From: Octopus sinensis
Lineage: Eukaryota
Direction of reading: 5' to 3'
NCBI RefSeq assembly: GCF_006345805.1
Contig: NC_043004.1
Span: forward strand, 19,158,001 to 19,222,000
DNA: 64,000 nt
The notes beneath the pieces are model-generated. The model did not search any database. It worked only from the letters and a program-made list of their open reading frames with translations, and was not told the DNA's origin. A program made the position numbers and the translations under genes. Positions 5,098-49,998 of this stretch are shown one piece after another (the first letter of the stretch is position 1; each line of letters begins with the position of its first letter).

Positions 5098-5207
5098 ACA
5101 ATCTTCTGGTGACCAAAGACTGCAGTGTGAATGGAACATGGGAGTTACATCCGATCACTAAAAGACCCTGGACTGACTACACAGTATGTTTTCTAAACAA
5201 GCTAGAG
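5098..5207 (+). CDS. Class B1 GPCR exon: C-terminal half of the hormone-binding ectodomain
   Basis: tttacAG acceptor, GTAAG donor. Phase 1 to phase 0. Encodes xNLLVTKDCSVNGTWELHPITKRPWTDYTVCFLNKLE, matching the calcitonin-receptor-type pattern K-x-C-xxx-G-x-W-xx-HP-xxxx-W-xx-YT-x-C. Confidence 0.9.
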
Positions 5208-6929
5208 GTAAGAAGAACACGTTTACTCCATTTGGAAAAGTAAATATTTCAAAATATCATTTGAACAATCTGAAAGATATAAAACAAAATGACAAGAACT
5301 GTGAGAGAGTGGACAAGACACAATCATACAGTCAAATAGATACAGAAAGAAAATGAAGAAGATTGAGAGATACGTAATGGGATTGAAAGGAAGAGTGAAA
5401 TATAGAGAGGAACTGTGAAGATGAATTGAAGAGAATTAGAGGAAGAGAGAGAGAGAGAGAGAGAGAGAGAGAGAGAGAGAGTGTGTGTTGTAGGAGTAAA
5501 GAACAACGAGTTATCTGTAATGACAGTGAAACAGATGACAGATAAAATATATATTGCAAATTTAGGTATGGCAATTGCATGATGTATTGGACAGCCACCA
5601 CATCTTCGCTGTAGCTGTATTGTTTTTCCTCTGAGCAGGATACGTAATTAATCTATGAGCGATATAGATACAAGATCTATTGCATATGTTACCCAAGATA
5701 GACTAGATTTATGGCTTAGCCACTTAAAGTAACAGAATTCCGAACTAAGCACTGGTTCTATGTGCTCCTGTTGTTCCTACAGACATTTATCATTTTATCA
5801 TTCTAAATCGCATTTTAGAGATGTGTTGGCATTTCTTTAAAGTTGAAAGCCATTTTCAAATGTTGTAAGCAAATAATGTGCACAGAAATCGTACGAAAGT
5901 AAAAGGATTACTTGATACCAGGAAAACAATTGATGTATTCAGTTCATGAATGAGAGGCACAATTAGTGAACCAAAAATAATGTGATTTTTTATTAAAGCA
6001 CAGTGCCTAAGAAAGATAATTGATAAATATGTTTGTTTTATTAAGTACAGGACCAATGGGTTTCTGTGATATTCGTGAAGGCGTTTTTTTTTTATTTTAG
6101 AAAACATCAGTAACGAATGCGACATATCTAAAAATATTAACGATTCTTTAGTCCTATTAAACAGTATTTAATTCAGATGCTGGTCTAATACACGTAAATG
6201 GTCGGGTAACAGTTCATTAGAATACAAGAGATTACAGAATATAGAATAGACTGCAACCTTAGAAAAATAACAGTTTCTTTAAACTAACGTGACATGATCA
6301 GGGAGTTATTTCACTTTTGTGTATGTGAAATTACCTAACTGAATTCACTTATTTCACTCCAGAGTTTCTTACAATAAACAGGTTTTTATGGAAGTATATT
6401 ATATCAGCAAAATACTGGAAATATTACTTATAACAAACGATCTATGTTCTATTAGAAAGGAAATGTGAAGTTGCGACACTTATCCATTTCAAAAATCGTT
6501 TAACAGAATTTAATTCAATGTATATATATAAACACACACACACACACACGCACACTTCCTCTCATATATACATATATATATATATATAATATATATATAT
6601 ATATATATATATATATATTATATATATATGAGTATGAGTAAGTATTTCATTTATGTCTTACGTATTTATCGCTGAGGAGGAGAAAATTCTCATGAATTAA
6701 CTCTGAAATTGGGACCAATACGGTAATAACGGAATTTTTTAGAAATTTCTATCGGCTTGTTTCGAGAGGCATAAATTATAATGGTTATTGATAATTTGTC
6801 TATTTTCGGCATATTTGGCATTAGAATTTTTCTTTTGCCCTTATTTTATAAGCTATATATATATATATATAATATATATATATATGATCTATTATCTTTT
6901 GCTAATTTAAAGTAGAGGCGGACGCTCTG

Positions 6930-7250
6930 ATAGGGTACCGCCTTTCAGTGTGATTAACGTTTCTCTGCTGTAATGCTTCTTATGAAGTAGCGAATTGGAC
7001 GGAGTTGTTATGTTTTGTGCCTCCTGCTGTGGTGTGGGTCCATCTGCTATATTAGATAAAAACTTATTTAAAGACTTTCACATCTATAACTCGCACGTTT
7101 TTGACTGCTTGGCAGAGTGTTAAATAGTTGTGGACCTTTGAAACCCAATGTGTTACAGTAGTGGGTCAGTAGTTGAAGAAAACTTTGTTTCTGCTATGTA
7201 GTGCCATCCATTCGGTGATTGGTATAGCTTTTAATTTCAAAATTGAGAAC
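6930..7250 (-). mobile_element. Decayed LINE ORF2 C-terminus/3' end, clade unresolved
   Basis: The minus strand reads LGFKGPQLFNTLP, then after a frameshift VKNVRVIDVKVFK, then FLSNIADGPTPQQE. This resembles the C-terminal tail of CR1/L2-group ORF2 (recognised from memory). Confidence 0.5.
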
Positions 7251-8212
7251 TAGACCTTCCAGGATGTTCTATATATAGATCACTGCATAACTTTCACGCG
7301 CTCTCTCTAGGGAGTAGTGGTTCTGTTCCATCAGTCACCAACAGTACCATTTCTGTTGAACCAAGTCACTCTGAGGATCCGTTGTGGTCGAGTATCTATG
7401 TATCTATATGCGATTGGAACATCTATCGTAGGGCTCCAAACAGCAATAACAGTGAAACAGAATGTGTAGGAACTTTAATATAAATTTAAGTTTATCCTTA
7501 TCATTTGCTGCTTTTGCTTTGTAGCTTATAACGGAAAATAGTCGTCAGTATGTTAGGTGATGAACAACTATACAGAAAACAGGATACGTTATAAAATTCT
7601 ACGTGAATCTGCAATCATAACAGGAGAGGTGCATCTACTTGTACATATAATTTCTGATATGCGTGTGTGTGCATCTTTGTGTGTGTGTGTGTGTCTGTGT
7701 ATGTGTGTGTGTATGTGTGAGTGTGTGCGTGTGCGTGTATGGATGGATGGATGAATAGATTAGAAAGTTATAATGGAGATGTATAATTTTTCATTGTATA
7801 ATTTATGCCTTTCTGATATGGTCCAGCATTTTACGTGAAATTCTTGGAAGCGAACTCAGGATTTAGCAATCGAAGGCGTACAACTGCAATTGTTAATTCT
7901 ACACGATTCCAAATGTTTATCAATATTTAATATGGTTTGCCCAAATCTGAATTTCAATAGAGCTTGTAAGGTATCTGGCTAGATATAAAATTCCTGTTCT
8001 TTTGTCTTTATACCCCTATATATATATACGTAAATGTCGAACCACGAGAATGAGTACTCAACATAGCATTGGTGGATAAAATTTCTTTATTTATGTATTA
8101 AGGCTACCATTGGTTTCAAGTTAAGAAAAATATCTTAATGTCTTAACAATTTTTCGAGCCAATTACATGGAGGGAAAATGTTTGTCTCCGATTTGTGTGA
8201 AAACACTATATA

Positions 8213-8597
8213 TTCTTTTACTCTTTTACTCTTTTACTTGTTTCAGTCATTTGACTGCGGCCATGCTGGAGCACCGCCTTTAATCGAGCAAATCGACCTC
8301 GGGTCTTATTCTTTAGTAAGCCCAGTACTTATTCTATCGGTCTCTTTTGCCGAACCGCTAAGTAACGGGGACGTAAACACACCAGCATCGGTTGTCAAGC
8401 AATGCTAGGGGACAAACACACACGCATATATATATACATATATACGACGGGCTTCTTTCAGTTTCCGTCTACCAAATCCACTCACAAGGCTTTGGTCGGC
8501 CCGAGGCTATATTAGAAGACACTTGCCCAAGGTGCCACGCAGTGGGACTGAACCCGGAACCATGTGGTTGGTTAGCAAGCTGCTTTCCACACAGCCA
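8213..8597 (-). mobile_element. tRNA-derived SINE, family A
   Basis: Minus-strand head with box A (TGGCTGTGTGG) and box B (GGTTCAGTCCC), an internal (TA/TG)n tract and an AAGAGTA repeat tail. Closely similar to copies at 21093 and 41164. Confidence 0.9.
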
Positions 8598-8858
8598 TAT
8601 ATATATATAGATGTTTTTAGGCATTTATGTGACATAAAATTTCATTCTTTGTATTTTGTTAAAATAAATTTTATCGATATACATACAGGTTGTCCATAAA
8701 TTACCTTTACGATATGAAAAATTCAGAAAGAAAAAATGAAAGACAAAGATCACTCATCAGAATTTATTGGAAAACATTGGCAAATAAATACACCTTTGTT
8801 AGAAACATCAGAAAACTTCCACGTGGGCTCCATTTGTTGATGTATCTCAAATTTAAAA

Positions 8859-48254: not shown

Positions 48255-48510
48255 AGAACGTAGAGACGGGTGAAATGCTGCTAAAGCATGAAATACCCAA
48301 CCCTCCATTCAGCGGGTGTTGAGAGCAAATGAAGCGCCAAAATAGTGGAGCGCGACCTTTCCGCAGAAAGCGGAAAGGTGCGTGTTCCATTTTAATCAGA
48401 CATACGATGGTCAAACGGTAATATAAGATGGAGGCGATGTAAGCATTCAACACATATGCCCGACATTTCAGAGGTAGCTGCTCTTGGTTCATTTCTGGGT
48501 GAGACAAGCT
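48255..48510 (-). mobile_element. Tx1/L1-clade ORF2 fragment
   Basis: LPLKCRAYVLNAYIASILYYRL...FRFLRKGRAPL...SQHPLNGGLG matches the post-RT LSxxGR...GGLG region of L1/Tx1 ORF2. Confidence 0.72.
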
Positions 48511-48539
48511 ACACTGCTTGTCATGTGGTCCCAGTTATT

Positions 48540-48895
48540 CTCCACCGGACCCAACCAGACCCCGAGAAATTTAACCAAATATCATGAATGTTGTGAGTAA
48601 AGAGGTTGAAAAAAAACGACGAAGTACTCTGAATTGAAAGAGAAAATGGCAAGGCTGTATGGCAAGCGAAATGGTAATCTATATGTAATACCGGTGGTGA
48701 ACGGAGTGTTGGGTTAAATCCCATTGAAACTTCAAAACTTCTTAAGGCAACTGGAAATCCCATGCAAGATTGATGTCTTGCAAAAATCTGGCTTATTGGG
48801 CACAACACACATCTTAAAGAAAGTAGTATCTGAGGTCCTTGTGACTTGACAGATGACTAAAAACTCCGGTGCATTTTTACCTAGAGCGTGTTACG
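48540..48895 (+). mobile_element. R4/Dong-group 3' end, followed by (ACT)n(AAT)n
   Basis: KYSELKEKMARLY...VIPVVNGVLG*IPLKLQNFLRQLEIP...LQKSGLLGTTHILKKVV, then a short UTR and the microsatellite at 48900-49010. Confidence 0.72.
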
Positions 48896-49895
48896 AAGGA
48901 CTACTACTACTACTACTACTACTACTACTACTACTACTACTACTACTACTACTACTACTACTAATAATAATAATAATAATAATAATAATAATAATAATAA
49001 TAATATAATAATATAATCGTTGTTGTAAATATTCAACTTGATATATAGTGATAGTCACACCCTGAAAAAAAAATTACACATCTACAGTTTTGTACCACAA
49101 TTCAATACTTTTGACTTCACACGATCTACCGAGTTGTATTAGCAAACTGTTGTATCTTCGTATCTAAGTTGCATATCAATGCATCAACATACTTGAAAAT
49201 TAAAATACTTATGCGTCGTTATTGTTGTTAGCCTTCATAGACAAATAATCCTATCTGGAAACAATGTTTGTTTTACGTGATTGTTAATCTTTCATACAAA
49301 TCACCAAAGAGAAGAAAATGTTCCTTCTAGTGACTTATGTATATAAAGGCTTAGAAATAGTAATATAAAATGTCGGACAATGATAATGGAAATGCAAAGA
49401 TTAATTATACATTTTCCCTGTTTATTTGTTCTGTTATCGTTTAGTTCTTACGTTTGAAACAAGTTACAAATTGAACAGAAGTATGGTCCTTGAATAACCC
49501 CCAGTACTTAGTTATCTCCTATTGTAATCCGACCTACGTAAGTTCAAAACAACTGTATCTGCATCAGAAATGGGAAAAACCTTTACAGTTTTCAGCCTGT
49601 TGTGATCAGATTAACTATTTGCTGCAATACTTTTGGACTTGTTAACAGTCTATTTAATATAAGAGACATAGCAATTAAATAGTTTACCATTTATAATTTC
49701 AAGACACAAAACTGATATTTGTCAGAGACTAAAATTATCAGAATATTACTGATACTTATTTAAACAGCTATGATGAACGAAAAGCAAAAATCTATTCATG
49801 CAGCATTTCACAGATTATAAACAAAAATGATATTGTTTGTTAAATTACTGCTTCATGTCTGGATAACATTTCCAAGATTTTATAATTTTTTTCAG

Positions 49896-49998
49896 CCTCC
49901 ATACCGAAATAGATGATGACCCCAGGGTTAACTGCTGGATACCCCGTGCTGGACAACTAGAATGGATTTTTAATGTACCTCATATCATTTGTTCAATT
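49896..49998 (+). CDS. Class B1 GPCR exon: ECL2-start of TM5
   Basis: tttttttcAG acceptor, GTAAGT donor. Phase 2 to phase 0. Encodes LHTEIDDDPRVNCWIPRAGQLEWIFNVPHIICSI, with the ECL2 CW motif and TM5 Pro. Confidence 0.9.

What the first reader, a model, noticed from the sequence alone, without database searches (positions are those of the whole stretch)
5098..49998. Hidden, strongly divergent class B1 GPCR assembled from six small exons
Seen: six exons (653 nt) across 45 kb with canonical splice sites and a consistent phase chain (1-0, 0-2, 2-0, 0-1, 1-2, 2-0). The ORF track contains at most one of them. Established: this phase pattern and the K-x-C...W..HP...W..YT.C, WM..E...LH, WGxP and CW motifs are those of calcitonin/DH31/PDF-type secretin receptors. 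Unusual: TM1 lacks the G(Y/H)SxS motif (MNAAS instead). The ICL1 Cys and the TM2 Arg/Asn of CxRxxxHxN are gone (REMIIMIHIS). EGxYLH reads EASHLH. TM2 His and TM3 Glu are retained. Inference: a lineage-specific orphan receptor with altered activation or G-protein coupling.
Basis: partly seen in the sequence, partly recalled or inferred. Interest (0 to 1): 0.72.

Follow-up and report, generated by a model that had tools for sequence, protein, structure and literature searches.

The report
Octopus calcitonin-receptor-like gene, already annotated
The six small exons are real and encode the middle third of a peptide-hormone receptor gene that is already annotated in octopus genomes. It is an ordinary gene, apart from one normally invariant arginine that all cephalopod copies have lost.

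Summary
Six + strand exons (5098-5207, 14222-14313, 26417-26564, 27895-28045, 35283-35331, 49896-49998) total 653 nt. All have AG/GT boundaries and the stated phase chain. The spliced 217-aa peptide hits Pfam 7tm_2 at E=3.7e-25.

It is hidden only from a prokaryote-style ORF track. The peptide is an exact substring (residues 152-368) of Octopus sinensis XP_029640211.1 and O. vulgaris QHX41515.1, both named "calcitonin gene-related peptide type 1 receptor-like". The O. sinensis gene spans about 156 kb, so the window holds only its middle.

The gene belongs to "Cluster A", the protostome calcitonin-receptor-related class B1 group of Cardoso et al. Several "unusual" features are normal for that cluster (no TM1 Gly, no ICL1 Cys). 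Others are minority states (A3.51, H3.53, S2.52). One is truly unusual: R2.46 is Arg in 92 of 94 related receptors but Ile or Thr in all five cephalopod orthologues.

The gene is conserved and not a pseudogene. On exon C, dN/dS is about 0.10 against another octopod.

Verdict: a correct gene model of a known, annotated gene. Interest is low. The cephalopod-wide loss of R2.46 (and T6.42) is a modest lead for receptor pharmacology.

The parts
5098..5207 (+). Exon A (110 nt, phase 1 to 0). C-terminal end of the extracellular hormone-receptor domain: (D)NLLVTKDCSVNGTWELHPITKRPWTDYTVCFLNKLE, with ECD Cys 5 and 6 and the calcitonin-receptor-type HP / W-T-x-Y-T motifs.
   Evidence: partial HRM, 16.9 bits; aligned to CLR 111-137; identical to XP_029640211.1. 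Same junction ends as oyster Cluster A exon 2.
14222..14313 (+). Exon B (92 nt, phase 0 to 2). TM1: DVKTIVLVNIFMNAASILFLGPAIIIFLAY(K). S1.50 is kept.
   Evidence: (Cluster A HMM, E=1.5e-6). It is 31 codons long and ends in the same split codon as the oyster Cluster A exon 3.
26417..26564 (+). Exon C (148 nt, phase 2 to 0). ICL1, TM2 and ECL1: FLRREMIIMIHISFFTSLFLASVMLFLINTIFTYQNLTNPKRSSSTNDN. H2.50 is kept; R2.46 is replaced by Ile.
   Evidence: It is 93% identical to another octopod's contig (L001), against 78-81% in the flanking intron, with dN/dS about 0.10 and conserved splice sites.
27895..28045 (+). Exon D (151 nt, phase 0 to 1). TM3, ICL2 and the start of TM4: FECVSLNILHRYFDSATYFWMFCEASHLHQLTVNCFRPPRRMYMYHCFAW(G). 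It holds the TM3 Cys, E3.50, A3.51, H3.53 and W4.50.
   Evidence: (63.7 bits, E=2.4e-18). Same boundaries as the oyster Cluster A exon.
35283..35331 (+). Exon E (49 nt, phase 1 to 2). TM4: (G)LPLALMIIYIILRVK(S).
   Evidence: A stop codon follows immediately if the donor is read through, so the donor is forced. The junction to exon F matches the RefSeq protein (...RVKSLHTE...).
49896..49998 (+). Exon F (103 nt, phase 2 to 0). ECL2 and the first half of TM5: (S)LHTEIDDDPRVNCWIPRAGQLEWIFNVPHIICSI, with the ECL2 Cys-Trp.
   Evidence: (E=2.5e-6). The 3' end matches the oyster exon end. The 5' end lies about 9-12 codons earlier than in the oyster. An in-frame alternative acceptor 33 nt downstream exists but is not the one used in the database proteins.

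Best explanation
The six exons are the central coding exons (residues 152-368 of 525) of the Octopus sinensis/vulgaris gene annotated as "calcitonin gene-related peptide type 1 receptor-like". The gene is an intact, selectively constrained class B1 (secretin-family) GPCR of the protostome "Cluster A" / p-CTR group.

Shown:
- the exon model and its identity to the database proteins;
- family and subfamily placement;
- conservation across cephalopods;
- purifying selection on exon C.

Inferred mechanism: a secreted peptide docks its C-terminal part on the extracellular hormone-receptor domain. Exon A keeps the Trp-Thr-x-Tyr pocket residues of CLR. The peptide's N-terminal part enters the 7TM bundle, and the receptor then activates a heterotrimeric G protein, giving cAMP and/or Ca2+ signals.

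The most likely ligand class is a calcitonin-type peptide. This is because receptors placed in Cluster A in the literature respond to such peptides: C. elegans SEB-2, and two oyster receptors in one published tree.

The cephalopod clade has replaced R2.46 (Ile/Thr) and T6.42 (Leu/Ile), residues of the two conserved cytoplasmic polar networks of class B1. This may change basal activity or coupling, but it has not been tested.
For: - The exact exon model and 653 nt total.
- Pfam 7tm_2 at E=3.7e-25.
- CLR and CTR are the best PDB sequence hits.
- The peptide is an exact substring of XP_029640211.1 and QHX41515.1, and differs by one residue from CAI9726844.1.
- The O. sinensis gene spans about 156 kb and carries HRM plus 7tm_2. 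This explains why no N-terminal or TM5b-TM7 exons are in the window.
- Against labelled Mytilus references, the peptide scores 125-151 bits with Cluster A and 61-76 bits with authentic CALCR. There is no hit to PDFR.
- The cephalopod orthologues form a clade with 100% NJ bootstrap inside lophotrochozoan Cluster A.
- Exon C versus octopod contig L001 gives dS 0.26, dN 0.027 and dN/dS 0.10, with intron identity 78-81%.
- Amino-acid identity is 96% to O. bimaculoides, 70% to Argonauta and 51-53% to decapodiform transcripts with intact ORFs.
- Four of the five junctions, plus both outer ends of the six-exon block, fall at the same positions as in an oyster Cluster A gene.
- An AlphaFold model of the O. 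vulgaris protein shows seven TM helices and an ECD. Its best Foldseek hits are CTR/AMY/CLR (TM-score about 0.62 on the target, E about 1e-15).
- Literature: Cluster A was defined in PMC3961327 and PMC7200681. SEB-2 is activated by the calcitonin/DH31-like peptide NLP-73 (PMC7615250). Two oyster CT-peptide receptors are placed in "p-CTR [Cluster A]" (PMC12638048).
Against: - No expression data for this species were available. Transcript evidence is indirect: QHX41515.1 is a GenBank protein record labelled O. vulgaris whose origin (cDNA or prediction) was not established here, and the intact decapodiform transcripts come from other species.
- Selection was measured on 49 codons only.
- NJ support for monophyly of all Cluster A-like sequences was only 57%.
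- The AlphaFold model is of moderate confidence (pLDDT 64, pTM 0.52).
- The ligand is unknown.
- Cardoso et al. 2020 still call Cluster A orphan, and the nomenclature differs between papers. I did not test which subclade the deorphanised oyster receptors share with the octopus gene.
- Loss of R2.46 could mean weakened or lost G-protein signalling.
Confidence: 0.9

Rival explanations
1. A decaying or non-functional copy (pseudogene) whose central exons happen to be intact.
For: Several near-invariant class B1 residues are changed: R2.46, G3.51 and Y3.53 in the window, and T6.42 outside it. The O. bimaculoides RefSeq model has a non-homologous stretch in place of ICL3/TM6.
Against: - There are no stops or frameshifts, and all splice sites are canonical.
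- The same substitutions are kept in octopods, Argonauta and decapodiforms, with intact full-length ORFs.
- dN/dS is about 0.10, while dS matches the intron divergence.
- Full-length 7TM models exist for O. sinensis and O. vulgaris.
- The O. bimaculoides oddity looks like an annotation error.
Confidence: 0.03
2. An authentic calcitonin receptor (mollusc CALCR type I/II, orthologous to vertebrate CTR/CLR), a DH31 receptor or a PDF receptor, rather than a Cluster A receptor.
For: Automatic annotation names it CLR-like. CLR and CTR are the best PDB hits. Exon A carries the HP and W-T-x-Y-T motifs of the CTR/CLR ECD.
Against: - It scores only half as many bits against Mytilus CALCR I/II as against Cluster A references, and gives no hit to Mytilus PDFR.
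- It lacks G1.46 and the ICL1 Cys, which 37/39 CT/DH31-type receptors have.
- The full-length orthologue has the Cluster A N-terminal Cys-rich extension and the HPN(E/D)P ICL3 motif.
- It falls inside Cluster A in the NJ tree.
Confidence: 0.05
3. A receptor with changed signalling logic, caused by the loss of R2.46 and T6.42. It could be constitutively active, coupled to a different G protein, or largely non-signalling (for example a ligand sink or a partner of another receptor).
For: R2.46 is Arg in 92/94 related receptors but Ile/Thr in all five cephalopods. T6.42 is Thr in 63 of the 88 with a residue aligned at that column, but Leu/Ile in cephalopods. From established class B1 knowledge, not tested here: R2.46 belongs to the TM2-6-7-helix 8 polar network at the G-protein interface. 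H2.50-E3.50-T6.42-Y7.57 form the central polar lock, and mutations in that lock make PTH1R constitutively active.
Against: The other network members are kept: H2.50, E3.50, R6.37, N7.61, E8.41, and P6.47xxG6.50. Position 6.42 varies (Ala/Val/Ser) in other Cluster A members. No functional data exist.
Confidence: 0.25

Closest known systems
Octopus sinensis XP_029640211.1 / O. vulgaris QHX41515.1 ("calcitonin gene-related peptide type 1 receptor-like", 525 aa)
   Same: The window's spliced peptide is identical to residues 152-368, and all junctions agree. This is the same gene.
   Different: Nothing in the coding part. The European O. vulgaris genome models (CAI9726844.1/45.1) differ by one ECL1 residue (N to K) and have longer N-termini.
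Protostome class B1 "Cluster A" / p-CTR receptors (Cardoso et al. 2014, 2020; e.g. Mytilus ClusterAIa/Ib/II, oyster XP_022309962, C. elegans SEB-2)
   Same: - Best similarity: 33-37% identity, 125-151 bits.
- N-x-x-S in TM1, no ICL1 Cys, and a Cys-rich N-terminal extension.
- The HPN(E/D)P motif in ICL3.
- Shared intron positions with the oyster gene.
   Different: - The cephalopod clade evolves faster. Its mean p-distance to other Cluster A members is 0.65-0.68, against 0.54-0.58 for typical lophotrochozoan members.
- It has Ile/Thr for R2.46, Leu/Ile for T6.42, Ser for N2.52, mostly Ala for G3.51 and His for Y3.53.
- ECL2 is longer, and the exon E/F junction is shifted by about 9-12 codons.
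Human calcitonin receptor and calcitonin receptor-like receptor (CTR, CLR; e.g. PDB 5uz7, 6e3y)
   Same: - Same fold and domain order, and the best structural and PDB sequence matches.
- The ECD motifs HP and W-T-x-Y-T.
- The TM3-ECL2 Cys pair, and H2.50, E3.50, W4.50.
   Different: - Only about 25-28% identity.
- No G1.46-H/Y-S-x-S motif, no ICL1 Cys, no R2.46.
- N-Y-T reads D-Y-T in the octopus, so that glycosylation sequon is absent.
- RAMP partners are not known in protostomes (PMC12638048).

Membership tests
Class B1 (secretin-family) GPCR | 7tm_2 (PF00002) profile match above the curated cut-off | tested here: met
   89.1 bits against a cut-off of 20.6, E=3.7e-25, profile positions 12-167 of 250. 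The full-length orthologue carries PF00002.
Class B1 (secretin-family) GPCR | N-terminal hormone-receptor domain (HRM, PF02793) with six conserved Cys | tested here: inconclusive
   The window holds only the last 29 residues of the domain (Cys 5 and 6): 16.9 bits, below the 26.2 cut-off. The full-length O. sinensis, O. vulgaris and decapodiform proteins have PF02793 hits on record, so the feature is met for the gene but lies mostly outside the window.
Class B1 (secretin-family) GPCR | Signature residues S1.50, H2.50, E3.50, W4.50 and the TM3-ECL2 Cys pair | tested here: met
   All are present in the window peptide and in all five cephalopod orthologues. N5.50, P6.47xxG6.50 and G7.50 are present in the full-length protein.
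Class B1 (secretin-family) GPCR | Seven-helix bundle plus ECD fold | tested here: met
   The AlphaFold2 model of P0303 shows seven TM helices, helix 8 and an alpha/beta ECD (pLDDT 64). Every listed Foldseek hit (the best 50) is a class B1 receptor, with CTR/AMY/CLR first (E about 1e-15, TMt about 0.62).
Cluster A / protostome CTR-related receptors (Cardoso et al.) | Closer to labelled Cluster A members than to CALCR, Cluster B, CRHR or PDFR | tested here: met
   125-151 bits to four Mytilus Cluster A references, against 61-76 (CALCR), 60 (Cluster B), 42 (CRHR) and none (PDFR). It sits inside Cluster A in the NJ tree. Support for the whole cluster was only 57%.
Cluster A / protostome CTR-related receptors (Cardoso et al.) | Cys-rich N-terminal extension before the HRM, and the HPN(E/D)P motif in ICL3. 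These recur in the labelled members I read; they are not a published definition. | tested here: met
   The O. sinensis protein has ...CTVLSRQECERWKTCSLDAVKCC... and ...ESHPNDPSS.... Mytilus Cluster A has the same pattern. Both features lie outside the window.
Cluster A / protostome CTR-related receptors (Cardoso et al.) | Activation by a calcitonin-type peptide, as reported for SEB-2 and for two oyster receptors placed in Cluster A in one published tree (PMC12638048) | not testable with these tools
   Literature only (PMC7615250; PMC12638048).
Authentic CALCR/CLR-type (incl. mollusc CALCR I/II) and DH31 receptors | G1.46-(Y/H)-x-x-S1.50 in TM1, the ICL1 Cys and C-x-R2.46-x-x-x-H2.50 | tested here: not met
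   The window has M-N-A-A-S and R-E-M-I-I-M-I-H. In 39 CT/DH31-type relatives the counts are G1.46 37, ICL1 Cys 37 and R2.46 39.
PDF receptor | Significant similarity to a labelled PDFR | tested here: not met
   There is no blastp hit at E below 1e-3 between the window peptide and Mytilus coruscus PDFR.

The most novel reading that the evidence does not exclude
Coleoid cephalopods fixed, in their common ancestor, a Cluster A calcitonin-type receptor that lacks R2.46 and T6.42. Each residue belongs to one of the two conserved cytoplasmic polar networks of class B1 GPCRs. As a result the receptor would signal in an atypical way: high basal activity, a switch in G-protein preference, or ligand binding without classical coupling. 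That would make it a natural experiment on the class B1 activation switch.
Probability: 0.2. Interest if true: 0.4.

Novelty: already known. Interest (0 to 1): 0.15.

Why it matters
The product, however, is a gene already present in RefSeq and GenBank, and it belongs to a described family. The one point of biological interest is the cephalopod-wide replacement of the otherwise near-invariant R2.46 (and of T6.42). This could be used to test how much class B1 activation depends on these polar networks. It could also help to pair octopus calcitonin-type peptides with their receptors.

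Tried and rejected
- First protein search. The first word-indexed search with the spliced peptide found only two fragments and suggested an unannotated gene. This was a sensitivity artefact. The exhaustive HMMER search and a second search seeded with its best hit led to the annotated octopus proteins.
- Further exons in the window. I looked by motif scans, tblastn with 150 relatives and a Cluster A HMM against all stop-to-stop fragments. 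None turned up. The 156-kb extent of the gene explains this.
- A minus-strand fragment at 47984-48208. It scored 18 bits on the TM1-TM2 part of the HMM, but it is low-complexity Ile/Phe/Asn-rich sequence without His2.50. I rejected it as chance.
- An alternative acceptor for exon F, 33 nt downstream. It is in frame but has a weak pyrimidine tract and is not used in any database protein.
- Oyster gene mapping. An exact-match splice mapper failed because the assembly differs from the one annotated. I read the junctions from tblastn instead.
- Species identification. The intronic retrotransposon ORF gave only 74% identity or less, with bivalve hits at 43-48%, so it was not diagnostic.
- Literature. 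Searches for the SRA run and for papers naming this octopus gene found nothing. The 2024 Cardoso review is not held.
- Genomic DNA. DNA for O. vulgaris CAI9726844.1 and for O. sinensis could not be fetched. I therefore could not compare the window with them at DNA level.
- Rfam gave no match in the window.

Full report
**1. The observation**

Reading the flanks gave six exons:

| Exon | Coordinates | Length (nt) |
|---|---|---|
| A | 5098-5207 | 110 |
| B | 14222-14313 | 92 |
| C | 26417-26564 | 148 |
| D | 27895-28045 | 151 |
| E | 35283-35331 | 49 |
| F | 49896-49998 | 103 |

- Each has an AG acceptor preceded by a pyrimidine-rich tract (0.72-0.89 pyrimidines over -20..-3). Only 6% of all AG dinucleotides in the window reach that level.
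- Each has a GT donor, four of them gt[ag]ag[ta].
- The phases chain as 1-0, 0-2, 2-0, 0-1, 1-2, 2-0.
- The spliced 217-aa peptide has no stop.

**2. It is not chance**

- The peptide scores 89.1 bits (E=3.7e-25, cut-off 20.6) on Pfam 7tm_2. It also matches the last 29 residues of the HRM domain (16.9 bits, partial).
- Against PDB sequences the best hits are human CLR (9e-20) and CTR (5.8e-18), then PTH1R.

**3. What it is**

- The first word-indexed protein search was nearly empty. Its one close hit, P0001, is a prokaryote-style ORF call on a 2.3-kb genomic contig of a related animal (L001) that reads through exon C into the intron.
- The exhaustive HMMER search gave 497 relatives. The best was P0003 (52% identity), a full-length ORF on a 2350-bp contig and therefore most likely a transcript.
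- Searching with P0003 found annotated cephalopod proteins.
- The window peptide is an exact substring (residues 152-368) of Octopus sinensis XP_029640211.1 and O. vulgaris QHX41515.1.
- It differs by one ECL1 residue from O. vulgaris CAI9726844.1/45.1. It is 96% identical to O. bimaculoides XP_052825817.1, 70% to Argonauta hians GAB1600609.1 and 51-53% to decapodiform sequences (the cluster that includes Acanthosepion pharaonis CAE1310808.1).
- All are named "calcitonin gene-related peptide type 1 receptor-like" or "calcitonin receptor".
- The window is therefore Octopus DNA, most likely O. sinensis, because the N variant in ECL1 matches that species.
- The O. sinensis gene spans about 156 kb. 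This explains why tblastn with 150 relatives and a Cluster A HMM found no N-terminal or TM5b-TM7 exons in the 64-kb window.

**4. Which family**

- The nearest named relatives are lophotrochozoan "CLR-like" proteins, with arthropod members as well.
- Cardoso et al. defined a protostome-specific class B1 "Cluster A", described as the most divergent cluster (PMC3961327). They found it expanded in molluscs (PMC7200681).
- I took labelled Mytilus sequences from that paper's supplement. The window peptide scores 125-151 bits against four Cluster A references, 61-76 against authentic CALCR I/II, 60 against Cluster B, 42 against CRHR, and nothing against PDFR.
- In an NJ tree the five cephalopod orthologues form a clade (bootstrap 100%) nested among lophotrochozoan Cluster A sequences. 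Support for the whole cluster was modest at 57%.
- The full-length octopus protein also has the Cys-rich N-terminal extension and the HPN(E/D)P motif in ICL3 seen in Mytilus Cluster A.
- In an oyster Cluster A gene (L003), four of the window gene's five junctions fall at the same positions, and so do the outer ends of exons A and F. Only the E/F junction is shifted, by about 9-12 codons in the variable ECL2.
- An AlphaFold2 model of the O. vulgaris protein has moderate confidence (pLDDT 64). It shows seven TM helices plus an ECD, and it matches CTR/AMY/CLR structures first.

**5. How divergent is it really?**

I tabulated key positions in 55 Cluster A relatives, 39 CT/DH31-type relatives and 5 cephalopod orthologues.

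| Position | Octopus | Cluster A (n=55) | CT/DH31-type (n=39) |
|---|---|---|---|
| G1.46 | M | no Gly among the five commonest residues (49 of 55) | G in 37 |
| 1.47 | N | N in 14 | N in 1 |
| ICL1 Cys | absent | C in 6 | C in 37 |
| N2.52 | S | S in 2 | none among the listed residues (N32, H5, Q2) |
| G3.51 | A | A in 6 | G in all 39 |
| Y3.53 | H | H in 5 | H in 7 |
| R2.46 | I (I or T across the five cephalopods) | R in 53 | R in 39 |

- Lack of G1.46 and of the ICL1 Cys is therefore typical of Cluster A, and N1.47 is common there.
- S2.52, A3.51 and H3.53 are minority states that also occur elsewhere.
- S1.50, H2.50, E3.50, L3.54, H3.55, W4.50 and the ECL2 Cys-Trp are kept.
- The exceptional change is R2.46, lost in all five cephalopods.
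- Outside the window, T6.42 (Thr in 63 of the 88 relatives with a residue aligned at that column) is Leu/Ile in cephalopods. R6.37, N7.61, E8.41, P6.47xxG6.50 and G7.50 are retained.
- The cephalopod clade is also faster-evolving. Its mean p-distance to other Cluster A members is 0.65-0.68, against 0.54-0.58 for typical lophotrochozoan members.
- So "divergent" holds in a limited sense. It is a property of a cephalopod-wide orthologue group, not of one species.

**6. Functional or decaying?**

- Exon C is 93% identical between the window and the octopod contig L001. The flanking intron is 78-81% identical.
- The 10 exon differences are 7 synonymous and 3 non-synonymous, all three in ECL1. This gives dS 0.26, dN 0.027 and dN/dS about 0.10. 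The splice sites are conserved.
- The unusual residues are conserved from octopods to decapodiforms, and intact full-length ORFs exist in transcripts.
- A pseudogene is very unlikely.

**7. How it probably works**

- By homology it is a peptide-hormone GPCR.
- Exon A keeps the HP and Trp-Thr-x-Tyr residues that align to CLR 119-124. In CLR these residues line the pocket for the peptide's C-terminus; that point is established knowledge and was not tested here. The N-Y-T sequon reads D-Y-T in the octopus.
- Ligand inference comes from the literature:
  - C. elegans SEB-2, placed in Cluster A by Cardoso 2014, is activated by the calcitonin/DH31-like peptide NLP-73 (PMC7615250).
  - A 2025 study places two oyster receptors for disulphide-bearing calcitonin-type peptides, which signal through Ca2+ and cAMP, in the clade it calls "p-CTR [Cluster A]" (PMC12638048).
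  - Cardoso 2020 still calls Cluster A orphan. I did not test which subclade the deorphanised receptors share with the octopus gene.
- A calcitonin-type peptide is therefore the most likely ligand (perhaps 50%). An octopus calcitonin-like peptide is listed in Cardoso's supplement.
- Loss of R2.46 and T6.42 touches the TM2-6-7-helix 8 network and the central H-E-T-Y polar lock (class B1 knowledge). Altered basal activity or coupling is possible but unproven.

**8. Verdict**

The gene is already annotated and belongs to a described family, so the novelty class is "already known" and the interest is low. The cephalopod-wide loss of R2.46 is a small, testable lead.

Noticed in passing
window 35787-37652 (-), 38531-39229 (+), 35722-35819 and 39197-39294: An intact 621-aa Penelope-like retroelement ORF (RVT_1, plus a marginal GIY-YIG match) lies in the E-F intron, only about 455 bp downstream of exon E. 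A truncated inverted copy (232 aa) sits next to it, and 48-bp repeats in opposite orientation sit at the outer ends. The best database relative is 74% identical and unnamed; named relatives at 43-48% identity come from bivalves and from metagenome bins of bivalve symbionts.
   Followed up: partly
window 53280-54731: A 491-bp unit repeated three times in tandem (93% matches). Each copy carries an ORF fragment with C2H2 zinc-finger-like motifs, below the Pfam cut-offs.
   Followed up: partly
window 47984-48208 (-): A stop-to-stop fragment scores 18 bits on the TM1-TM2 part of the Cluster A HMM and contains NLFISFIL. It is Ile/Phe/Asn-rich low-complexity sequence and lacks His2.50. It is probably a chance match in AT-rich DNA.
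   Followed up: partly
window 12517-12957 and many other sites: The introns are very rich in microsatellites, e.g. (TGTA)n of 441 bp, plus many (AT)n, (GT)n and (TATC)n arrays. These create long spurious ORFs on both strands.
   Followed up: no
window 21268-21573, 41339-41614, 42036-42311: Three copies of a short interspersed repeat give near-identical ORFs starting MSSNARGTNTDTQT....
   Followed up: no
O. bimaculoides XP_052825817.1 (P0314) and the old 375-aa model (P0316): The O. bimaculoides RefSeq protein has a non-homologous 40-residue stretch where ICL3/TM6 should be. The older model stops exactly at the end of exon F. This is probably a missed exon or an assembly gap rather than real loss.
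   Followed up: no
window 49929-49930 (alternative AG inside exon F): A second in-frame acceptor (cccag|G) lies 33 nt into exon F. Using it would give an ECL2 shorter by 11 residues. It is not used in any database protein.
   Followed up: partly
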